Source of the DNA: Thalia democratica
Lineage: Eukaryota
NCBI GenBank assembly: GCA_965202585.1
Contig: OZ241829.1
Span: 16,740,001 to 16,804,000 of the forward strand
Reading direction: 5' to 3'
DNA length: 64,000 bases
Numbering within the stretch: the first letter of the stretch is position 1; every line of letters begins with the position of its first letter. The notes beneath the pieces are model-generated. The model was not told where the DNA came from and searched no databases. It worked only from the letters and a program-made list of their open reading frames with translations. A program made the position numbers and the translations under genes. Shown piece by piece: positions 1-13,515 of the stretch.

Positions 1-225
1 AGATACTTACTTAGCATTAGTGTTAATAATGATCTTAACAAAAAAAAAACCGAATAAATAAATTAAATAATGATTTATTAAAAAAAAATTATCGACCAAG
101 TACAAAGATTAGTGGTAACAGTGACAAACAGTAAAAATACTCAAAATAAATTAATTAAAATAACACTGTAATAAAAACGTTTTTAACTAGTGAAAAATTC
201 ATCTTGTTTGAAAAAATGATCTATT

Positions 226-265
226 GTGCAAAAATATCCCGTCGTGCAAATTTGACACCTACCCA
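226..265. repeat. Remnant terminus of the GTGCAAAA-array (foldback-type) element family
   Basis: gtgcaaaaatatcccgtcgtgcaaatttgacacctaccca resembles the reverse complement of the left end of the 10555-13155 element (tgggtgggtgtcacttttgcacg). Confidence 0.55.
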
Positions 266-652
266 GTACTAATAGAAACATTAAACTAAGTCCTTTTGAA
301 ACACTAATCTAGATTATTTCAAGAACAGTATCTATTCTATTGTATACTTGGTTGAGTAAGCAAGTGTTTCTAAGTTTATTAAACAAACAAAAGCCATAAG
401 ATGTTCACTTAATGTAATTAAGTTTAAGAATTATGTTAATTGTTTTTTTTTTCAAAGCTTCCTAAATGATTTATATTTGATATTAAAATACAATTTGACT
501 ATAAAAAACGAAGTAAAAAGACAAATTTTAAATAAGTAGGTTGTTTAAATTGTTTGTAAAATATTTATATTTGTTACTATGTTGTTTAATACACGAATTC
601 AAATTAATTTGATGTGTTTTGCAGCTATAAATAATCTTAACTGAATTTAAGA

Positions 653-3452
653 ATGTCATTGAAAGTGGAAAGGAAAAAGAAGGTTAGTATTTGAAAACAA
701 CTATAGTAACAAACATTTAATTTTTTATATGTATTATGTTGTAAAACTATTGGAGAATTAACTTTTAAGGCAAAAATCATAAACTTATCATCTAAATTAG
801 TTAGTTAATCTAATTTGCTATATTTTAGAGTTTCTTAATAAATATTACAAAATTAAAAATATACATGCATAGAAAAACAATATAAGTATTTATTAGATAC
901 TATCTAGCTACATTATTGTTTTTGATTTTTTGTTTTAAAACGGCTTAAATTTAAAACAATAACTAAAAATATGTATATACTTTAAAAGTATTTAAAAAGA
1001 GTTTACCAAAGTATATGAAAATAAAAGTAAAAAAATGATTTTCAGAAGAATATTAAAACATAAATGACCAGTATTTAAACAACAATATACACAAGAAATA
1101 CAATTTCAATTAAACTAAATATATTTCGAACAATTCTCACTAGTAGAATACAAAGTTGACAAGTGATAAGATTTTACAAACTTTTATAGTAACCTTGTAA
1201 TAAAAAGATTACTAAATAACAAAGCAATTAGTAACAATTATAATCATTTAAGTTTATTCACGTTATAACTAATCTACAGTGAACTATACATCAATATCAT
1301 GAAAAAAACACTTATAATTATTTGAAAGTACTTTATTTGTTTTATTTATCTTGAACAAAAGAGCATGTCCCAAAGTGTGTAGTTAGTTTTTGATCTTCAG
1401 AATAGGAGCATGATATACAGGTCAAGGTTTTAAATGCATCTAAACGTTCATCCATTGCAAACAATTTGGGTAATAACTCAACATATGCAAACAGTTATAA
1501 TCTAAATAGATTCAAAGTTTTTAAAACTTGTAGTAGTAATTTGATTTTATTAAACTACAAACTATTTGTATTTTATTAAAGAAGCCTGTGTTATGTAAGC
1601 AAAACGACTTTTACTGTACTGTTTCTATATTTTCGTAGTATTTATGTGTGTTATTGCTTTTGTCTTTTAATCATCTTTTGATTACTTTATGATTACTTGG
1701 CTATTATATAAATTTGTAAAATATTATCTCTTTTTAGCTTTGTAATCTACTAAAGGGAATTGCTCGTAATATATTTATTTTTTTGAAATTGTGTGTCGTG
1801 TATATCTTATGGTAATTTAGTAGAATGCAAATAACAATTTATTTTAAATTTTATAACTTTAAGACCAAAAATTGATGTTCACTTCATTTTTTTTAATCAT
1901 ATTAGTTTTAATTTTACTTAAAAAAGTAAAACTTTTTTCAAAATAATTATATTATTTATATCCTGTTTTGTATGCGTTTTATATTTTTTTTATAAAAGAA
2001 TATCCGATGGGGAGGCAAATCCATAGATCATTGGATATTTAAAGCGTTTCAAAAATCTGGAACAAATGAGTTGAATATTAAGGAAGTTCGTGATAATATT
2101 TCAGAATTGCTACCAAGCCTAAAAAGCGAAATATACCAAGGCGGCTGGAAGGTAAAACTAAAAAAAAGAACTTAAATTGTGTTTATGTTTTCACAAAATC
2201 ATTGAAACACAACAAACCCTTTAAATCAAAACTTTACTTTACCTAATCTTTACTTTGTATTGGAGCACAGCGGTGTTTATTGGTTTTATTTAGTATTGGC
2301 TGAAAAATAAATACCTCACAACACAATAAAAAATTTAAACTAATAAATTAAATCAAAAAACATATTTTTTCTTAAAATTTAAGTTGGTATTTATTGTTAT
2401 TTTTACAAAACCACTTAAACATAAATACTATTTCTGTTTTAATAAAAAAAAAAACTGCTTACAGGACGCAGTGCTAAATAGGATGAAGATAAGTGAAAAA
2501 TACGAATGCGTTTCTGCGTCCGAATATCGAACAAGTTCAAGCAAGTAAGCAATTACAACATACTTAAGACTTTGATTTTTGTGTATTTATATAGGCCGTA
2601 CAACAATTATTATCACTAATATAGGTATATATTTTCTCATGTTTCAGGTTGATTTTCAGTTATTAAATAAATCTTATCCAAGCCTTCTTATATTTACATA
2701 AATTAAGAACTTTTTATTGTTAAATTTAAAGTAATCTGAACCATGTATTTACATTTTAAACCTTTTATTATGCAAACTAAGTTTTGGTCAATGGCCTCGT
2801 CAGTGCTTTAAAAAAATATAAAAAGATGTGTAAAAGTCATGAAAAATAGTATTTAAACAATTAAGCAATTCAAAACATGATATATATAAATTTTTCTTTT
2901 CATTTTAACTTACTGAAATGTTTTTTCAGGATTTTGTGTAACACAGTTTGGAGGTTGAAAAATGACGATGGTGGAGTGCAAGGTTTGGCCTTTTTTTTTG
3001 CTAAGGATATGTTTAATGTCAAAATGTTTACCTAAAATACCTCATAAAAATACGATCAAATAAACTTTAGTTTGTGTTGAAAACATTTTTTTAACTGAAA
3101 AGACATCTTTGCCACAAAGCAACAAATCAAACTTATTAAGTAAAAGGTAATAAAATAAAAAAATTTGTAGACATAAGTTGAGAAAAAACATCTATTTTAA
3201 AGAAGATTAAAACTAACAAATTTTTAGATTAAATTTTTCTTTATATATAACTTATAATTAATTTAATGACATAAAGTTTTAATACTTTCGTAAAAAATAA
3301 ATATTACTAGAAAATTTGAACATTGTTAAAATTTACTAATGTACAGTGCAATATTTAGTTTAAATCTATTTTTTATTTGTCTTAAAAAAGTATAAAAGTA
3401 GGCTTGTTTTATACTTTATTTTTATACAGATGCAGAACAACCACTTAACTGA
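653..3452 (+). CDS. Small (112 aa) divergent forkhead-like winged-helix protein, 5 coding exons
   Basis: Exons 653-682, 1999-2151, 2465-2544, 2930-2982 and 3430-3452; all introns are GT-AG with compatible phases (0,0,2,1). In-frame TAA upstream of the ATG, an acceptor at 624/625, and AATAAA at ~3484. Protein: MSLKVERKKKNIRWGGKSIDHWIFKAFQKSGTNELNIKEVRDNISELLPSLKSEIYQGGWKDAVLNRMKISEKYECVSASEYRTSSSKILCNTVWRLKNDDGGVQDAEQPLN. By-eye ungapped match to the forkhead pattern (S..IxxAIQSS..xLTLxEIYxWI...FP; GWxNSIRHNLSLNxCFxKV; YWxL). The gene model is better supported than the fold call. Confidence 0.75.
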
Positions 3453-5152
3453 TCAGTCTAATATAAAACAGGAAGGAATTATTAATAAAACCATTTATAT
3501 TTATTGTAAATTATCATATATTTCGGCTATTTTTTTACAATAAAATTAATAATTTAATAAAAATTATAACAAATGTTTAGTTCTAAAAAGGTAAATAAAA
3601 GTTTTCAACTACAAAATAAAATTATATCAATGAGACAAAAACTATTAGAATTTTTTACGTTTCTTATGCTGTGTGATTTTGTATATTTAAAAAAACTTTG
3701 TGTTGTTTGTTGTGTTTTTGAACTAATTTTCAGATAAAATAAATCACGACAAAAATTAGATTGCTGTTTTTTAGTAACATTCTATTTATTTTGTGTATTA
3801 TCTAGGTTATTTAAAGTTACTACACCTTTTTATATTATTTTAGATTTACCTTGTGTTTGCATGTCAATTCAGGTCGGACTCAACAAACTACGACAATACA
3901 TATTCTTAATTAAAAAACACAAACTTAAGGCCTACAACTCGAAAATTTATATATGTTTGAAACAAAAGATTTGTCTAAAGGTCTAATAAAAACTATAAAC
4001 ATATTTTTTGTTTTTGAACAAATACTTTTTTATAAACTTTTGGAAAAAAAAAAGAAATACAATTGATAAATTATTTCAGCCATGTTTCCAAGAATATTTT
4101 GAAATAGTTTTTGAACTATTAAGAAACCTTTATATGCAGTTAGGTTATCAACTCGTACACCACGGATACAGTTTAATGCCTAGTCCAGGACATATTAACT
4201 CTTTTATACATGAACTATTTTATTAAAGTGTTTTATTCAAAAGTTTATTAAATATTTCAAAGTTTTTATTTTTATTAAGGTGAAGGAATATTTTTATCTG
4301 ATTAAAAAGTAGTTTATAAGTCAATACTAGTACAAAAATCAAACATTAAGTTAACTAAAAAGACGAACTTTACCTACCTTTAACACCTGACCTTAATTTT
4401 TGCTAATCATCTTAGCATAAAAAAACACGTTATATCAAATTCTAAATTTCTGAAATCGAGCTAAGATTGAAAATAAGAATCAGTTACAAACGTTTTGTAC
4501 TTTTTAACAAATTTAATATTTATATAAACGTTATTTATGTCTTTTTTTATAAATTTTATGTCATCAATTAATTTAATTAAACGACTATCTAAGTTTAATA
4601 TGAACTTCGTATACGTAATAAATATATAACTTTTTGTTTGCATTTATTAGTTTAGTTTTGTTGTTTTGATGGTAATCTTGCTTTAAAATCTTAAAAACAA
4701 TTATATCATTAAAAAAACATTTATAGAAAAAAAAATTTAATTAAAAAATCTTAAGAGCATAGGTTTTTGAGATTGTTTTTAAAATTAAAAGAAAATTTAT
4801 TTGTTGGTTTCTATATATTAAATAATATCACTTGTAAAAAAGTTTTGAAAAGCAACAGAAACTTGTTCAGTAGTTAGCTTCGTGTAAATAATAAATTTAC
4901 ACTTTCATAACATATCTTGGTTATGTAGAAAAATTTAAGATGTAAGTGAAACAAAAGAAAGCGTTAACAACTACTTAAATATTGATATTTACACTAGTAA
5001 AATATGCACAAATTTATAAGTATAAATAAACGTTGAAATATTTTTTATTATTTTTTTTTCAAACTTGTTAACTGTGTTTTATTTATATAATCGTGGTACT
5101 TTAACCCACGATTTGCATTAACTATCATTTTCAACACAGTTGTATGTGTGCT

Positions 5153-5590
5153 TCATCCACTCATTCTTTTCTGTATAGTAAATCCAAAACGTTGGCAAGT
5201 TAAAATACCTAAATACAACAAAATTAGTTTCTTTTGGATAAACGCAGTCGTTAGAATTATGCGGCTATCTTCTGAGATAATAGACCGTTTTGTTAAGTTA
5301 GACTTGTTGAAAGTAGAGTCGAAAACTTCAAAATTTTCAGCTGTGATATCACTAAACACAAACAACTTGTCTTTTATAGCAACAGAGTTTTGGCCACGTC
5401 TACTATGAACCATGCTTGGCATTTATGTCCATGCATCAGCTATATGGTCATATGACTCAACTGTGTTTGACGACCAAGCCTGACCCCATCCACCACAGTC
5501 TACAATTTTTCCTTCAAAAACTAATAAAGATGCATCATTTTTATTTTCAATCGTTCTTTAGACTTGACTCCAAAAGATCATTTGCTTTTA
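5153..5590 (-). pseudogene. Intronless kelch-repeat (KLHL-like) pseudogene fragment
   Basis: One minus frame reads WSQV*RTIENKNDASLLVFEGKIVDCGGWGQAWSSNTVESYDHIADAWT*MPSMVHSRRGQNSVAIKDKLFVFSDITAENFEVFDSTFNK. It has kelch GG, Y and W hallmarks, two in-frame stops (one TAA at 5423-5425) and no introns. Confidence 0.8.
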
Positions 5591-7803
5591 CAGATAAAAT
5601 TAGATCATTTTCTTTATTCTTTTGCTGTTTTTATTTTTTGTTGTCAAAATATTTATAGCCTTTGATTTTTTTATTTTAACAGTTTGTAAAATGTACTTTT
5701 AAAGAAAAATAAATATTAATCAACATTTTCATTTATGGAACAAAGACTTGTACGAATTTTTCAAAATAATTTTTATTAAGCTTTTTTATAAATAGTGTTT
5801 TGAGAAATTTTTAGTTATCATGAGTCTAAGAAAGCATAAGAATATTTTTTATTATAAATTTTTTAAGGTTGTATAGTTTATCTTCAGTTTTAAGTTCTAC
5901 TACTTAGTAAAATTTGAAACAAAGGCAAAATAATTGCTTTTTCAGGTTTTTTTTTTTGTATAAAATCAAAACAGACACTTTTTCTTAAGCTTAAAAAACA
6001 ATAATAAAAGCTAAAAGCAGAAATTAAAAAATATAGTAAATACAAGTAAAAGTATAAAGAAGCTTTTTTTTAAACTAGTTATTAGGAGTATATTTATAAA
6101 AAGTTGTTATTTATTTTAAGTATTATTTTGGTAAATACATTATTTTAAAAATTGTTTTTTTATTTCAACATTTTTTGTTATGAATTATTACTACTTCATA
6201 TTTATTAAATTCTTATAAAGAATAAAAATTTATAAAAAAAAGAATCTCTAAAATTAAAAAAAAAGTTTTTGTACAACTAGTTATAGTAATGTTCTAGCAA
6301 AGTAATTTTGTTTTTTTTATAGAATTTTATTCCGATTATAAACTCAGTTATGTTAATAGAAATCTAAATTTTGGCGATTTATAACAAACTTCATTTATAT
6401 AGCAAATTAAAATTGTGTATTTCATAAATATTTTACGGAATGAGCAAAAAATAGAATAGAATTGATTTTATTAATTTTGTCTTATATAATATGTTTTAAT
6501 TTTTTTTTTCTACGCAACGGTAATATTTTGATTTTTTTAATTTTAATCAAATTTTTTTTATCATTATTTATTTAAAAATATTAAAAAAAAAATTAAGTTC
6601 TTTAGCTGTTAAACCCATTTTTAGTAGATAAACGTTTTTTTATAAATATTTGCAAAAGAAAACAATAAAAATTTTTTATAGAAAACCCTTCGAGTTGAAC
6701 ATCGCACAATCAAAACACAAGGAAAAACATATGCTATATCATAAATGCAACTTTAATCAAGAAAACATGCTCACCAAGTTCAGTTATATTCAAAAAAAAA
6801 TGTCATATTAATAAAACAGCTACTAAAAAGTTCAGCTAGAGGTTATACTAACTGTGCATACGTTTGTGTATGTAGTACTTATTTATTAAGACTTATGGAA
6901 AAATTACATATAATTTTCTTTGATCTAGTGTACTTTAATTATCAGTTAAAACTTTAAATAAAAATTAAATGGTCAAATTTCTAATGTTTATGTTTAACTA
7001 AGTATAAAATAGCATCATATTATACAAATGCTCAACATTCAAAACAACCTAACAACTGCAATGCAGAAATTTTATTAAAGTAAGGTTTAGTAAACAGTAT
7101 GTTTATCAATTTGAAAAATCAGATAAAACTACGCTAACTGAAATGTTATGTTCTTATAGACATTCAATCTTAATATATTTCGTAATGTTATTATATTATT
7201 TTAAGAAAACAATATACGGTGAACATTAACTGCTAGAGTTATAGATCTTTTTAAAAAGTATTTCATATTAAATAAACAAGTCATTAACGACAAAATATTA
7301 ATTTATCAAAGTTTTACTTTATTTTTTAATTTAGACGTAATGCAGTACTTATCTTAAAATAAAATACTAATATTGACAATCAAAATCTTTGCAAAAACAA
7401 CAACTCATTTTTAATACAAGATTTCATTTGATTAGCTTGATAAAAACAATACGAATTATAAGTAATACTCTCCACTAAATCATAGTTTAGACAAACTTTT
7501 AAGCTCTAAACTTTTTGAGTTTGTTTGATGCTCAAGGTTTTGTTTTTCTAAACTAACTAATCATATCGTTATAAAACCTTGACTCCAGTTTTATGAACAT
7601 ACCTTAAAAAACTATTATCCTACTTGAATAGCAAAAAAAAAATGAAAACTTTAATTAAAAAAATAATTAGTATATAAAATGTTCACTAGTAACATTCAAT
7701 ATTTTTTTATAAATTATCTACATGAAGTTCTACTTATAAAAATGTATTATTAAATATTTTATTTGTTATGGTACTTAAACCATTAATAATTCGTAGTTTA
7801 TCC

Positions 7804-10066: not shown

Positions 10067-13000
10067 CCGTAACCTCTCGTTTATTCAGCATAATGTGTCC
10101 ACAGAAAAAATGCGTAAAGATACGAGAGATCGTAAAGATACGAGAGGTACGAAATATACTTACTATAATAGCTTTTTTGATATTTTTTTGATATTGCTTC
10201 TACTTAAAAGCAGACTGAGGACTTTCTGACTTATAACAATTTGTTTACTTTATTTATAAGTATGTATACAAAAGATAAAACTTTACATATAAAAGAAAGG
10301 ATTTAATTGTATGTAAAATGATAATACTTGTAGAAAAATTTTATTAATTTTAATAATAAGTAGATTTTATCTTTATCTTTACTTATGTCTGACTTATATG
10401 ATACTTAACATTTATATTCTATTCTACTCAAAAATCGCTGTGCAAAGCAAATGTTACAGAAGAAGAACATAAACTAAAAAAAAAAACGTCAAATGAAAAT
10501 TAGTTATATGTTTACTAAAAAAACAATTAAGATTTGTTTTAAGTGTAAGCTCTATGGGTGGGTGTCACTTTTGCACGAGCGTCACTTTTGCACGACTGTC
10601 ACTTATGCACGAAGGGTCACTTTTGCACGAGGGGACACTTTTGCACAAGGGGACACTTTTGCACGGCGACTCTTTTGCACGAGCGTCACTTTAGCACGAG
10701 GGGACACTTTTGCACGACATCACTTTTGCACGCAGGGTCACTTTTGCACGAGGGGACACTTTTGCACGGCGTCACTTTTGCACGAGCGTCACTTTATCAC
10801 GAGGGGACACTTTTGCACGGAGGGTCACTTTTGCACGAGGGGACACTTTTGCACGGCGACTCTTTTGCAAGGAGGGTCACTTTTGCACGAAGGGACACTT
10901 TTGCACGGCGTCACTTTTGCACGCAGGGTCATTTTTGTACGGCGTAATTTTTGCACGAGGAGACACTTCTGCACGGCGACATTTGTTACGGCAGCATTGT
11001 TGCACAACGGTACTTTTGCACAACGTCACATTTTTACTATGAAGATTTTGCCCAGCGACATTTTGGCACAATGATTTTTTCGCACGGAACATCAATTTTT
11101 CATTTTGGTAAAAAGTTCTTTAGTTAGTACCAAATTTTTAACATACTTATATTAAAGGCAAAAAATGAAAGATTTAAAATCTTAAACAGTAAAAGTTAAT
11201 GTTAGAAACAAATTAAGGAAAGATAAAATATAATTATTTATAAAAAATTCATACCAGGGACAAAAAAAATAATTAATTTAGAAACTAGGATAAAAAATAC
11301 TTTGAGTGTACGTAAGTTGTTCTAGTTTATTTTGAACTTTAATATATTAGTCAACAACTATGTCATATTATACATTTAACTACACAGTTAAAAGTTTATT
11401 GTCAATATGATGGACCTAGGCATCAAAACCTAGACCACTTAAACTGAAAGAAACATAACAAAAAATAAAATTAATACAAGAAGTTTATTTATTAAAACAA
11501 AGATAAAAACATAGTTTGATATAAAACTTATAGGTTAACATAAAAAGCAAAATGTTAAACACAAACTTATACTTATTTACGCTTTGATGTAGAACGATGA
11601 ACGTCAAATATTTAAACGCATTGATTAACAACAAAAACCTAACGCTCCAAGGACATTAAAAATAGACTGGCTAGATGAGTAATCATTAAATACATTGAAA
11701 AAGGACTCATTATTAATATAGTAAAGGTGCTGCTAATATAATAAATTGAATTAGAAACTAAGCTTAATCTTAAAATTAAATCAACGGTTGATAAAAATTA
11801 CTGATTAATTTTGCTAACACAAATATAATTTTGATATAAAAATTTTAACTTCAATCGAAATTCTTTAAAATTTTTGCAAGAAACTAATTCATTTGTAAGT
11901 TTGTTCCAAATTTCAACTGACCGATAAAAAAAAATTCTGCCAAGCCTCATTATTGAAATTTTGCAGCGGTTGAAGACTAATATGATATATTTTCTTTTAA
12001 CATAAGTTCAAACTTCCAAATGTTATTTCTCTTTGGCTTATCATGATCATGCAAAGTTATAATGCTGAAATAATCCAAGTTCAAATCATTTTATTGCTCT
12101 TTTTATTCTCACGCTAAATTAAAAAATAGACTGAAAAATAAACGTCAAGTAAAATCTTAAATACCTTCACAATTCAAAAATTAACTAAATCTTTTGTTTT
12201 ATTTTAACAATCGTTTAAAATTAAAATAAATTTTAACCATTTGTTTAACAACTATATATTGCTAATTTGAACATCAAGAGAATATAAATAAAAAATAATA
12301 CTCAAGATTCGTGTTTCAAAGCCTTACTAAATTAAGGTTATCTTTCTCTTTAAAATTTCAGGAGATTCAGATAATTTTTATTTAAATTATTCAAAATTGT
12401 TTGTTATTCATCTAGTTTATTTTGATTAAGATTATAAATATGAATAAATGAATTGTGGTACGTAATTATATTGTTCTCCGTAAAACTTAAGATAAAAACT
12501 TTTATTTAAGAAATTTATTTAAGCACTGACTAGGTATTAGACCAAAACTTAGTTTGTAAAATAAATTTTTGCAGCAATTATTTCATAAAAACTTTACATT
12601 AAAATTTATTAAAAAACTACAACATTTTATTTATTCAAAACAACTTGCGTTTAAAAGCGAATATTATTTAAATTGACAAAAAAAAATCTATTTATATTTT
12701 TATTTGAGAAAATAAAAATTAGAAGCGTGCAAAAGTGAAGTTCCGTTCAAAATTGACTGATTATTTAAAATTTTGCAGTTCATAAGTATACCCGTGAAAT
12801 TATAACGCCGTGCGAAAGTGACGCTTTGCAAAAATGTCGTCATGGAAATGTAACGTCGTGCAAAAGTTTTGACGTGTAAAAATGTCGCCGTGCAAAAGTG
12901 TCCTTCGTGCAAAAGTGACCCTCCGTGCAAAAGTGTCACCTCGTGCAAAATTGACCCTGCGTGCAAAAGTGACCATCCGTGCAAAAGTGTCACCTCGTGC

Positions 13001-13515
13001 TAAAGTGACGCTTGTGCAAAAGAGTCGCCGTGCAAAAGTGTCCCCTCGTGCAAAAGTGAACCTTCGTGCAAAAGTGACGCTCGTGCAAAAGTGTCCCCTC
13101 ATGCAAAAGTGTCTTCGTGCTAAAGTGACGCTCGTGCAAAAGTGACCCGTTGCCATATTATTTATTTGTTTTACAAACTCTCATTATTTCATTACACTTT
13201 CATTATTTAACACAGTCATATTTCTTTCAGAATTTTAATTTAACCTCTTATTAATAAAATTTTTTTTAATATACAGAGGTATAACTAAATGTTTATCAAT
13301 TAGTCAAGGAACATAAGTTTACAAAGTCTAAAGGTATAGAGAGGTGAGTTTGTACTTAAAAACGTTTTTTACATTAAAAATAGACAATAAACATTATTTA
13401 TGCAATATCAAAGAAAACTAACGTTTTCATTTTTTGAACTTTTTAGAATTCTAAAATGCGTAACTCAACGAGAGTGCGTAACGTCACAAGTGCGTAAAGA
13501 TTCGAGAGGTTACTG
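10067..13515. mobile_element. TA-flanked Tc1/mariner-pogo-type MITE, copy A, interrupted by a nested foldback-type element
   Basis: TIRs (c)cgtaacctctcg / cgagaggttactg are each flanked by TA. Segments 10067-10554 and 13156-13515 are colinear with the copies at 41711 and 54109. Confidence 0.85.
10555..13155. mobile_element. Foldback-type element with long modular inverted arms built of ~20-bp units (GTCACTTTTGCACGAGGG / GACACTTTTGCACGGCG)
   Basis: Tandem array at ~10555-11090 and the reverse-complement array at ~12725-13155 enclose a ~1.6-kb unique core. Ends are TA-tgg ... cca-TA. The long ORFs in the track here are array artefacts. Confidence 0.8.

What the first reader, a model, noticed from the sequence alone, without database searches (positions are those of the whole stretch)
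653..3452. Stand-alone 112-aa forkhead-like protein with a rewritten recognition helix
Seen: a clean 5-exon ORF missed by the ORF track. By eye, helices 1-2 align ungapped to forkhead domains (10/32 identities against a FoxA-like sequence from memory), as do GWKDAVLNRMKISEKYECV against GWQNSIRHNLSLNECFVKV and the terminal VWRL. Known: the N, R, H and S residues of helix 3 mediate RYAAAYA recognition in Fox proteins. Here they are D, L, N and K, and there is no transactivation region, only a basic N-terminus (RKKK). Inference: a lineage-specific Fox-derived microprotein with altered or no DNA specificity, possibly a dominant-negative or chromatin/protein-binding module, with three introns inside the domain.
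Basis: partly seen in the sequence, partly recalled or inferred. Interest (0 to 1): 0.7.

Follow-up and report, generated by a model that had tools for sequence, protein, structure and literature searches.

The report
FoxO-derived mini forkhead gene in salp
A small five-exon gene of a very AT-rich planktonic animal encodes only a badly diverged forkhead (probably FoxO-type) DNA-binding domain whose DNA-reading residues have been replaced; selection keeps it intact in two copies, but its expression and what it binds are untested.

Summary
Exons 653-682, 1999-2151, 2465-2544, 2930-2982 and 3430-3452 (+) join through GT-AG introns into a 112-aa ORF. Exon GC is 38% against 20-23% in the introns.

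It is a diverged forkhead domain. An HMM of this genome's FoxO domains scores the spliced protein 21.7 bits (P about 1e-8; best of 3000 shuffles 11.3). A profile of exon 2 and its only two relatives finds nothing but forkhead exons in the 800-Mb genome. Against all PDB sequences, FOXN3 and FOXO1/3/4 lead that profile's hits (E 0.001-0.03).

The intron after GGWK sits where this genome's FoxO, FoxK and FoxP genes are split. Helix 3 reads DAVLN where Fox proteins have N(S/A)IRH.

An inverted copy 110 kb away keeps all exons. dN/dS is 0.09-0.23 and dS about equals intron divergence. The scan's earlier odd forkhead + zinc-finger gene (s1-274441, other DNA of this genome) is its sister.

Weak points:
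- No RNA evidence could be had.
- No structure prediction was run.
- The C-terminal half is forkhead-like only in an anchored test (p about 0.01).
- Related-taxon contigs carry broken copies.

Verdict: a real, lineage-restricted, probably FoxO-derived forkhead offshoot. Function unknown, moderately interesting.

The parts
611..624 (+). Pyrimidine-rich tract plus AG acceptor just upstream of the start codon. It may be a cis- or spliced-leader trans-splice acceptor. Its function is inferred only.
   Evidence: The sequence reads gatgtgttttgcag, followed by in-frame TAA codons at 632-634 and 638-640. It is conserved in the paralog.
653..682 (+). Exon 1 (CDS part): MSLKVERKKK, a basic N-terminal arm with an RKKK run.
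   Evidence: ATG and donor GTTAGT. There is 1 difference in 60 nt against the paralog. It resembles exon 1 of the sister gene, MTSLKLK.
683..1998 (+). Intron 1, phase 0, 1316 nt.
   Evidence: GT..AG, 21% GC. 89% identical to the paralog's intron.
1049..1815 (+). Very abundant foldback/MITE-like repeat inserted in intron 1.
   Evidence: More than 150 genomic matches at 75-88% identity. Inverted arms at 1112-1206 and 1687-1781. Unitig depth in the thousands. Absent from the related-taxon contig L060.
1999..2151 (+). Exon 2, residues 11-61: forkhead helices H1 and H2, the H2-H3 loop and the GGWK start of H3. It carries most of the homology signal.
   Evidence: 16.4-17.4 bits against the FoxO HMM; the next best of 1191 window ORF fragments scores 6.9. 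The profile search finds FOXN3/FOXO structures and only forkhead exons genome-wide.
2152..2464 (+). Intron 2, phase 0, directly after GGWK. This is the same position and phase at which this genome's FoxO, FoxK and FoxP domains are split.
2465..2544 (+). Exon 3, residues 62-88: helix 3 (DAVLNRMKISEK), strand S2 (YECV) and the start of a lengthened wing 1.
   Evidence: Ungapped HMM and hhalign alignment to NSIRHNLSLHSKFKRV. In the anchored test 36 of 3000 C-half shuffles reach the observed score. Not significant when tested alone.
2545..2929 (+). Intron 3, phase 2, in wing 1 between S2 and S3. The sister gene on C5:24.49 Mb has a phase-2 intron in the same place; the FoxO genes do not.
2930..2982 (+). 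Exon 4, residues 88-105: the end of wing 1, strand S3 (VWRL) and an acidic tail.
   Evidence: VWRL lies where FoxO has WWMV. The paralog has a compensated pair of 1-nt indels here.
2983..3429 (+). Intron 4. Its donor GTTTGG is the weakest. If it were not spliced, the protein would end 16 codons further on.
3430..3452 (+). Exon 5 (CDS part): DAEQPLN and the TGA stop.
   Evidence: 100% identical to the paralog over 49 nt.
3484..3489 (+). First AATAAA after the stop codon, a possible poly(A) signal. Such hexamers are common by chance in this AT-rich DNA.
1..4445 (.). The window's part of an inverted segmental duplication of at least 12.5 kb. It runs from 8 kb upstream of the window to 4445. The partner is C5:16850036-16864000, about 110 kb away on the opposite strand.
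   Evidence: Blocks of 81-92% identity.

Best explanation
This is a real, lineage-restricted protein-coding gene. It descends by duplication from a forkhead gene, most likely of the FoxO group, and has been cut down to the DNA-binding domain alone (112 aa).

Shown:
- The N-terminal two thirds (H1, H2, the loop and the GWK that opens H3) are homologous to forkhead domains.
- The gene shares the Fox intron after GWK.
- It forms a three-member family with its inverted duplicate and with the forkhead + zinc-finger gene at C5:24.49 Mb.
- Both local copies have been under purifying selection since they split.

Inferred:
- The protein still folds as a winged helix. The positions aligned with the hydrophobic residues of Fox helix 3 and strands S2/S3 remain hydrophobic (V64, M68, I70, Y74, V77, VWRL), and indels fall only in the H2-H3 loop and wing 1.
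- The surface that reads DNA has been replaced. N54c>D and H58c>N remove the only two residues that make direct base contacts in Fox proteins. R>L is a further loss, and new R67 and K69 appear.
- Wing 2, the Akt sites and the transactivation regions of FoxO are gone.
- The protein stays basic (pI 9.3) and carries an RKKK arm before H1.

The most likely working mode is therefore a small nuclear winged-helix module. It would bind nucleic acid, with new or low sequence specificity, or a protein partner. It is unlikely to read the RYAAAYA forkhead site and cannot activate transcription by itself.
For: Gene model and composition.

Homology to forkhead:
- The FoxO-group HMM, built from 7 spliced domains of this genome, scores 21.7 bits (P 9.5e-9) over HMM positions 4-78.
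- 3000 shuffles reach at most 11.3 bits.
- hhalign of the three-member family against canonical Fox gives 97%, P 1.2e-10; against the FoxO group 97.4%, P 9e-12.

Unbiased tests, using profile A1 of exon 2 from the three family members only:
- In the whole genome it finds the 3 members, and then 11 hits that are all forkhead N-terminal exons; the best is E 8e-4.
- Among 177,635 PDB sequences its leading hits are FOXN3 (E 0.0013) and FOXO1/3/4 (E 0.004-0.03), apart from three designed helical repeat proteins in the same E range; 15 of 28 hits are forkhead domains.

Sister gene:
- Smith-Waterman score 76 against a shuffle mean of 31 +/- 5.7; blastp E 7e-8.
- Its exon 2 hits Pfam PF00250 at E 6.7e-4.
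- Both genes have a phase-2 intron in the wing.

Shared intron after GW[KQ].

FoxO affinity:
- The W-G motif before H1.
- A higher score with the FoxO HMM than with the generic Fox HMM.
- The tree puts the family on the FoxO side of a 96/90 split.

Selection:
- 12 differences in 339 CDS positions against 267 in 2397 intron positions (Fisher p 2e-6).
- dN/dS 0.23 overall and 0.09 for codons 11-100; dS 0.10 is about the intron divergence of 0.11.
- Under neutrality P(no frameshift) is about 0.03 and P(no stop) about 0.06.

DNA-reading residues: PMC8501956. Charge.
Against: - No RNA evidence. The only runs that hold the locus are DNA: even unitig depth of about 42x over the introns and no splice joints.
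- No spliced product of this gene is among 1.84 billion protein representatives.
- Pfam's own Forkhead model finds neither exon, in isolation or in the six-frame genome scan at E<=10.
- The C-terminal half is not significantly similar to FoxO or to the sister gene when tested alone. It is supported only in the anchored test, at p 0.012-0.04.
- The fold was not predicted.
- Contigs of a related taxon carry a candidate-like exon 2 with four stops. They also carry a copy of the sister gene with a frameshift and a lost donor, so the family is dispensable at least there.
- The selection signal rests on a dozen substitutions.
Confidence: 0.6

Rival explanations
1. A young relic. The two copies are unexpressed or non-functional leftovers of a FoxO-type duplicate. 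Their frames are still open, and they are on the way to the decay seen in the related taxon.
For: No RNA run holds the locus. No transcript-derived protein is in the collections. The related-taxon contig L060 has four stops in the matching exon and no recognisable exon 3. The sister gene's relative there is also broken.
Against: CDS divergence is a third of intron divergence (p 2e-6). dN/dS is 0.09-0.23 while dS equals intron divergence. All 8 splice dinucleotides, the ATG and the stop are kept in both copies. The chance of an open, in-frame CDS after 11% neutral change is about 0.002.
Confidence: 0.17
2. Not stand-alone. Exons 2-4 belong to a longer transcript with further coding exons, for instance an effector domain like the zinc finger of the sister gene. 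The 112-aa model would then be incomplete.
For: Exons 1 and 5 are short and were found by eye. The exon 4 donor GTTTGG is weak. The sister gene continues into a C2H2 finger. The duplicated block reaches at least 8 kb upstream.
Against: In-frame stops lie between the upstream acceptor and the ATG. Exon 1 resembles the sister gene's first exon, which also starts with ATG. No C2H2 pattern and no match to the sister's downstream exons is found in 12 kb. Flanking ORFs show nothing related. The duplication ends 1 kb behind the stop codon.
Confidence: 0.1
3. Only half a forkhead. Exon 2 (H1-H2) is Fox-derived, but the sequence after GGWK is unrelated or has drifted beyond the fold. The protein would then not be a winged helix, and 'rewritten recognition helix' would be a misnomer.
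For: Exons 3-4 alone score 0.6 bits against the FoxO HMM and z 0.9 against the sister gene. Wing 1 is 7 residues longer than in FoxO. No fold prediction was made.
Against: The junction after GGWK is at the conserved intron position and in the same phase. The helix-3 alignment is ungapped, with hydrophobic residues at the positions that are hydrophobic in Fox, and VWRL lies at S3. With the N-half fixed, only 36 of 3000 shuffles of the C-half reach the observed score. This half has 1 non-synonymous and 5 synonymous changes over codons 62-100 between the copies.
Confidence: 0.1
4. An EF-hand-like calcium-binding helix-loop-helix, not a forkhead.
For: Pfam's best (non-significant) match of exon 2 is an EF-hand family, E 0.12. 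Several weak hits in the 1.84-billion search are EF-hand repeat proteins.
Against: Those hits sum several repeats of about 10 bits each. The loop QKSGTNELNIKE lacks the acidic DxDxDG ligands (read from the sequence). With the family profile, the best EF-hand-containing structure (phospholipase C delta) has E 1.8 against 0.001-0.03 for forkhead domains. The genome-wide profile scan finds only forkhead exons.
Confidence: 0.02

Closest known systems
FoxO transcription factors (FOXO1/3/4, DAF-16), forkhead domain PF00250
   Same: H1-H2-loop-GWK aligns end to end (profile positions 4-51) with the FOXO1/3/4 DNA-binding domains. It shares the W-G motif before H1 and the intron after GWK. Positions that are hydrophobic in Fox H3, S2 and S3 stay hydrophobic, and the domain is basic.
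   Different: Helix 3 reads DAVLN, not N(S/A)IRH. There is no wing 2 basic region, no Akt/14-3-3 sites, no NES and no transactivation domain. It is 112 aa against several hundred. The H2-H3 loop is 3 residues shorter than in FoxO and wing 1 is 7 longer. Two extra introns are present.
The odd forkhead + zinc-finger gene of the same genome at C5:24.49 Mb (scan finding s1-274441)
   Same: It is the nearest relative: 26% identity over 80 aa, E 7e-8. It has the same short ATG exon, the same exon 2 ending in WK, and the same phase-2 intron in the wing. Both have Asn at the Fox histidine position, a basic residue after it and Lys two further on: VLNRMK against IRNKLK, where FoxO has IRHNLS.
   Different: The sister keeps Arg57c and a short wing, and continues into a C2H2 zinc finger. 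The candidate ends after the domain. The sister reaches 20 bits on Pfam Forkhead with exon 2 alone; the candidate does not.
FoxO-like gene cluster of this genome (C2:81.16-81.36 Mb, C4:25.2 Mb) and the divergent FoxO-like gene at C10:18.14 Mb
   Same: These are the best non-family matches of exon 2 in the genome (E 8e-4 to 0.01 with profile A1). They have the same exon end, GGWK or NWK.
   Different: They keep the canonical NS[IV]RHNLS helix 3 and have H3 to S3 in one exon.
microProteins (Id, LITTLE ZIPPER and similar): small single-domain paralogs that interfere with larger transcription factors
   Same: Small size, a single domain, and derivation from a multi-domain transcription-factor family. 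A longer paralog with an extra effector domain exists in the same genome.
   Different: Classical microProteins act through a dimerisation domain. Forkhead domains mostly bind DNA as monomers, and no interaction was tested here. This is a resemblance of design only, drawn from my own knowledge of the concept.
Linker-histone-type winged helices (H1/H5, HP1BP3)
   Same: A small basic winged-helix module without sequence-specific reading residues. HP1BP3 appears among the weak profile hits (E 0.11).
   Different: The match is much weaker than to forkhead domains. There are no lysine-rich tails.

Membership tests
Forkhead (Fox) domain, Pfam PF00250 | Sequence match to a forkhead profile beyond chance | tested here: met
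   FoxO-group HMM 21.7 bits, P 9.5e-9; shuffles reach at most 11.3. hhalign 97%. Profile A1 against PDB is led by FOXN3 and FOXO1/3/4 at E 0.001-0.03. The genome-wide scan finds only forkhead exons.
Forkhead (Fox) domain, Pfam PF00250 | Score over Pfam's gathering cut-off (27 bits) with Pfam's own model | tested here: not met
   Exon 2 and exon 3 give no PF00250 hit at E<=10 when scanned singly. The locus is absent from the six-frame PF00250 scan of the genome. The spliced 112-aa protein could not be submitted because it has no reference. A generic Fox HMM built here gives it only 10.6 bits.
Forkhead (Fox) domain, Pfam PF00250 | Recognition-helix motif N(S/A)IRH, with Asn54c and His58c reading the bases (PMC8501956) | tested here: not met
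   The aligned residues are D62 A63 V64 L65 N66.
Forkhead (Fox) domain, Pfam PF00250 | Winged-helix fold H1-H2-H3-S2-W1-S3 | not testable with these tools
   The spliced protein has no reference and was not typed into a tool, so there was no AlphaFold or Foldseek run. Indirect support: ungapped helices, hydrophobic residues at the aligned Fox positions, and indels only in the loop and the wing.
Forkhead (Fox) domain, Pfam PF00250 | Binding to RYAAAYA (FKH) or GACGC (FHL) DNA | not testable with these tools
   This needs EMSA, PBM or SELEX.
Fox genes of this genome (FoxO, FoxK, FoxP) | Phase-0 intron directly after GW[KQ] at the start of helix 3 | tested here: met
   The candidate has GGWK|gt. 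The same junction is seen in 15 spliced Fox domains of the genome.
FoxO subfamily | W-G-N-x-S-Y motif before H1, where other Fox proteins have K-P-P-Y-S-Y | tested here: met
   The candidate has RWGGKS and the sister has RWSGFK. FoxO of this genome has AWGNLSY and the canonical Fox genes have PPYSY.
FoxO subfamily | Five-residue insertion in the H2-H3 loop (PMC7140813) | tested here: inconclusive
   The loop is 2 residues longer than in the generic Fox alignment and 3 shorter than in FoxO.
FoxO subfamily | Akt/14-3-3 sites (RxRxxS/T) flanking the domain, a basic wing 2 and C-terminal transactivation regions | tested here: not met
   There is no RxRxx[ST] motif. The protein ends 12 residues after S3 with an acidic tail.
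FoxO subfamily | Closer to FoxO than to other Fox classes | tested here: inconclusive
   For FoxO: the FoxO HMM scores 21.7 bits against 10.6 for the generic Fox HMM, and the tree puts the family on the FoxO side of a 96/90 split. Against: the branch is 4.8 changes per site long and its exact position is unresolved, and FOXN3 tops the PDB list by 1.7 bits.
EF-hand | 12-residue calcium loop with acidic ligands at positions 1, 3, 5 and 12 and Gly at 6 | tested here: not met
   The loop QKSGTNELNIKE has only the Glu at position 12. The Pfam EF-hand-type hit has E 0.12 and 13 bits against a cut-off of 27.

The most novel reading that the evidence does not exclude
The candidate, its duplicate and the forkhead + zinc-finger gene form a clade restricted to this salp lineage. 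In that clade the forkhead recognition helix was rewritten once, to x-x-[VI]-x-N-[RK]-[ML]-K, and then kept, giving a winged helix with a new target: a non-FKH DNA motif, RNA or a protein.

The 112-aa domain-only version would act as a microProtein-type competitor or decoy of its longer zinc-finger sister on that shared target. That would be a forkhead analogue of the Id/bHLH relationship.
Probability: 0.12. Interest if true: 0.7.

Novelty: new variant of a known kind. Interest (0 to 1): 0.4.

Why it matters
Forkhead domains are among the most conserved DNA readers in animals. Natural members that have lost both base-contacting residues yet stay under selection are rare test cases for how a transcription-factor fold is put to new use.

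This case offers a ready comparison within one genome:
- canonical FoxO genes;
- FoxO-like copies that keep a normal helix 3;
- a forkhead + zinc-finger gene with a changed helix 3;
- this domain-only gene.

If expression and binding were shown, the gene would be a tractable example of a microprotein born from a monomeric DNA-binding domain. It would also illustrate the rapid gene-family turnover of pelagic tunicates. If it is not expressed, it is just a slowly decaying duplicate.

Tried and rejected
Searches that found nothing useful:
- Pfam on single exons: nothing for Forkhead, only an EF-hand-type hit at E 0.12.
- ESM Atlas features for exon 2: no usable hit.
- phmmer of exon 2 alone against PDB: no forkhead, only a designed repeat protein.
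- Exhaustive HMMER of exon 2 against 1.84 billion representatives: only a 42-aa fragment plus repeat and EF-hand-like noise.
- Word-indexed homolog search with exon 2: nothing.
- JGI metagenome scan: nothing.
- Rfam on 1-6000: nothing.

RNA evidence: the one run search returned two runs of one sample. Laying them showed even genomic coverage and no splice joints, so expression stays untested. In hindsight an exon-only query would have been the more sensitive search for a small RNA.

Steps not carried out:
- The spliced 112-aa protein has no reference and I did not type it into the tools. AlphaFold/Foldseek, Pfam on the full protein and an exact-protein contig look-up were therefore left out.

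Ideas rejected:
- EF-hand (see the rival explanations).
- A downstream zinc finger like the sister's.
- My first guess that the minus-strand ORF at 5156-5422 is kelch-like.
- Significance of the C-terminal half on its own.
Full report
1. What is there

The window is very AT-rich eukaryotic DNA, 21-31% GC in 2-kb bins. It lies at C5:16740001-16804000 of an 802-Mb assembly. Earlier notes of this scan call the organism a salp, a planktonic tunicate. I did not test that.

On the + strand five exons (653-682, 1999-2151, 2465-2544, 2930-2982, 3430-3452) join through four GT..AG introns into a 339-nt CDS of 112 codons plus a stop.

- The CDS has 38% GC and the introns 20-23%.
- Exons 2, 3 and 4 coincide with three of the few 90-nt GC peaks in the 18 kb around the gene.
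- An AG acceptor at 623-624 is followed by two in-frame TAA codons before ATG 653, so the start does not depend on what lies upstream.
- No C2H2 pattern and nothing like the sister gene's later exons follows within 12 kb. The flanking ORFs are unrelated.

One correction: two introns lie inside the domain, one at its N-terminal edge and one behind it.

2. Is it a gene or a chance ORF?

A second copy lies about 110 kb away on the opposite strand, at C5:16850997-16854075. It is part of an inverted duplication of at least 12.5 kb, which runs from 8 kb upstream of the window to window position 4445. All five exons, the ATG, the stop and the eight splice dinucleotides are intact in it.

- The CDS differs at 12 of 339 positions; the introns differ at 267 of 2397 aligned positions (Fisher p 2e-6).
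- By Nei-Gojobori, dN is 0.023 and dS 0.097, giving dN/dS 0.23. For codons 11-100 it is 0.009/0.100 = 0.09. dS equals the intron divergence of 0.11.
- Synonymous sites have thus drifted like introns while the protein was held. Gene conversion would not produce that pattern.
- From the intron indel rate, 3.5 frame-shifting indels are expected in 339 nt (P of none 0.03). Only 6% of CDS copies mutated at 11% stay free of stops. The only indels seen are a compensating pair in exon 4.

Both copies therefore look constrained, although the counts are small.

3. Expression

This could not be tested. Laid on the locus, they give even unitigs of about 42x across the introns and no splice joints. They are genomic DNA. 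No spliced product is present among 1.84 billion protein representatives. This is the main gap in the case.

4. What the protein is

Single-sequence methods fail:
- Pfam on exons 2 and 3 gives no Forkhead hit.
- The six-frame PF00250 scan of the genome lists 129 places, but not this locus.
- phmmer against PDB and the protein Atlas give nothing.

The first lead came from the genome itself. The only non-self matches of exon 2 in 802 Mb, though weak (E about 6), are exons that PF00250 calls forkhead positions 5-43. Like exon 2, they end in GGWK at a splice donor.

I then spliced 15 split Fox domains of this genome. FoxO, FoxO-like, FoxK and FoxP genes all carry a phase-0 intron right after GW[KQ], which is exactly the candidate's exon 2/3 junction.

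Profile tests on the spliced protein:
- An HMM of seven FoxO-group domains scores the spliced candidate 21.7 bits (P 9.5e-9) over HMM positions 4-78. A generic Fox HMM gives 10.6 bits.
- 3000 shuffles of the candidate reach at most 11.3 bits.
- Exon 2 is the top fragment of 1191 in the window, at 17.4 bits against 6.9 for the next.

5. A sister gene and unbiased tests

PF00250 also touches C5:24.49 Mb weakly. This is the scan's earlier finding s1-274441, a forkhead gene with changed reading residues and a zinc finger.

- Its spliced N-terminal 116 aa match the candidate with Smith-Waterman score 76, against a shuffle mean of 31 +/- 5.7 and a maximum of 60. blastp gives E 7e-8, with 26% identity over 80 aa starting in exon 1: MSLKVERKKK against MTSLKLKSKK.
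- Both genes have an extra phase-2 intron in the wing between S2 and S3, which the FoxO genes lack.
- Its exon 2 alone hits Pfam Forkhead at E 6.7e-4.

Profile A1 was made only from exon 2 of the candidate, its duplicate and this sister.

- Across the whole genome it finds those three. Its 11 further hits are all forkhead N-terminal exons: the FoxO-like cluster at E 8e-4, a FoxO-like gene on C10 at 1.2e-3, and canonical FoxO (compared).
- Against all 177,635 PDB sequences the leading hits, apart from three designed helical repeat proteins in the same E range, are FOXN3 (E 0.0013), six FOXO1 constructs (0.004-0.009), FOXO3 and FOXO4 (0.013-0.03). In all, 15 of 28 hits are forkhead domains. The best EF-hand-containing structure has E 1.8.
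- hhalign of the three-member family gives 97% (P 1.2e-10) against canonical Fox and 97.4% (P 9e-12) against the FoxO group. The candidate alone gives 69% and 87%.

Homology of the N-terminal two thirds to forkhead domains is therefore established. It holds both by transitive evidence and by two searches that were not aimed at Fox.

6. FoxO origin

Several observations favour FoxO:
- the W-G motif before H1 (RWGGKS; FoxO has AWGNLSY, other Fox proteins PPYSY);
- the better FoxO score;
- an ML tree in which candidate + duplicate + sister form a clade (96/93) on the FoxO side of a 96/90 split.

Against certainty:
- the branch is 4.8 changes per site long;
- the loop between H2 and H3 is intermediate in length, whereas FoxO has a 5-residue insertion there (PMC7140813);
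- FOXN3 tops the PDB list by under 2 bits;
- the GWK intron is not specific to FoxO in this genome.

I put FoxO descent at about 0.7.

7. The C-terminal half and helix 3

The alignments run ungapped from GGWK through helix 3 to S2. FoxO NSIRHNLSLHSKFKRV aligns with candidate DAVLNRMKISEKYECV.

- Positions that are hydrophobic in Fox remain hydrophobic: I>V64, L>M68, L>I70, F>Y74, V=V77. VWRL lies where FoxO has WWMV.
- The outward positions are all changed.
- According to PMC8501956, only N54c and H58c of the N(S/A)IRH motif make direct hydrogen bonds to bases. Here they are D62 and N66, and R57c is L65.
- The sister gene shares Asn at the His position, a basic residue after it and Lys two further on (IRNKLK against VLNRMK). 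This suggests the change predates their split.

This half is weak evidence on its own. Exons 3-4 score 0.6 bits against the FoxO HMM and z 0.9 against the sister. With the N-half held fixed, 36 of 3000 shuffles of the C-half reach the observed FoxO-HMM score, and 119 of 3000 with the generic HMM. 'Rewritten recognition helix' is therefore the likeliest reading, at roughly 0.85 given Fox descent. It is not proven, and the fold was not predicted.

8. How it probably works

- The protein is basic (20 K+R against 15 D+E, pI 9.3), like the Fox domains of this genome, which have pI 8.5-10.1.
- It has an RKKK run before H1.
- It lacks wing 2, Akt-type sites and any activation region, and it ends in an acidic tail.

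My best reading is a small nuclear winged-helix module that binds nucleic acid, with new or low specificity, or a partner protein. It would not read the RYAAAYA site, so simple competition for FoxO sites is unlikely. All of this is inference.

9. Relatives outside the genome

- The only hit in the protein collections is a 42-aa ORF on an ENA plankton metagenome contig. That contig is 76-79% identical to exon 2 and parts of its flanking introns, lacks the intron-1 repeat, carries four stops in the exon and shows no exon 3.
- Contigs 87% identical to the sister gene, from two samples, carry a 1-nt deletion in exon 2 and a GT>GA donor.
- The family exists in at least one related taxon, but the copies seen there are broken.
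- The salp genome papers held in the library contain no occurrence of the word 'forkhead'.

10. Verdict

The Fox-derived reading is supported and sharpened: probable FoxO origin, a three-member family and purifying selection. Expression, fold and activity remain open.

It is a new variant of a known kind. Interest is moderate: a natural forkhead domain stripped to the fold and deprived of its reading residues, sitting next to informative paralogs, but not yet shown to be expressed.

Noticed in passing
G000 C2:65.4-66.4 Mb and C4:60.8-61.4 Mb (loci L064-L070): Two large arrays hold dozens of 50-67-aa open frames that match forkhead positions 2-42. One example gives PF00250 E 3e-5 and 24 bits; a typical sequence is ...KPDISYLMLFRYALFKQQGKLNYMQVIEWIREKFQFY.... 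A possible degenerate helix-3 exon lies about 1.2 kb downstream (SAGYINSTRGNL against SAGWKNSIRHNL). This looks like a second, much larger amplified family of odd forkhead genes.
   Followed up: partly
G000 C6:17.47, C4:54.49, C5:27.47 Mb (FoxO); C2:81.16-81.36 Mb and C4:25.2 Mb (FoxO-like cluster); C6:75.93-76.07 Mb, C5:51.6 and C5:66.8 Mb (FoxP); C5:5.88, 64.15, 69.84 Mb (FoxK): The genome carries three canonical FoxO paralogs and a tandem cluster of FoxO-like genes, some with stops. It also carries at least six FoxP-type and three FoxK-type domains. All are split by the same intron after GW[KQ]. This is an unusual multiplicity for a tunicate.
   Followed up: partly
L085 and L086 (ENA ERZ27291330, ERZ17174905) against L063 (C5:24.49 Mb): Plankton-metagenome contigs 87% identical to the forkhead + zinc-finger gene carry a 1-nt deletion in exon 2 and a GT>GA change at its donor, identically in two samples. 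In that related taxon the gene looks broken or rebuilt.
   Followed up: partly
L060 (ENA ERZ27291622, contig k119_821481): A related-taxon contig holds a candidate-like exon 2 (69% aa identity) with four in-frame stops and no recognisable exon 3. It lacks the repeat found in intron 1 of the window's gene, so that insertion is younger than the split.
   Followed up: partly
window 1049-1815: A very abundant foldback/MITE-like repeat with inverted arms at 1112-1206 and 1687-1781. The first look gave thousands of genomic candidates, and unitig depth is up to about 11,000. It has no Rfam match, so it is not one of the hammerhead repeats noted elsewhere in the window.
   Followed up: partly
window 1-4445 and 8 kb upstream; partner C5:16850036-16864000: An inverted segmental duplication of at least 12.5 kb, with blocks 81-92% identical. 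Its arms are about 106 kb apart, and the spacer includes the rest of this window.
   Followed up: partly
window 10493-11074 (+) and 12800-13156 (-): GC-richer stretches (about 30% GC) give long ORFs in several frames built from short repeated peptide-like units (GDTFARRHFCT...). This is probably a satellite or minisatellite, not a gene.
   Followed up: no
window 5156-5422 (-): An 89-aa ORF lies in the GC-richest patch near the gene (up to 48% GC), just outside the duplicated block. It has no significant Pfam match. It may be an exon of a neighbouring gene on the minus strand.
   Followed up: partly
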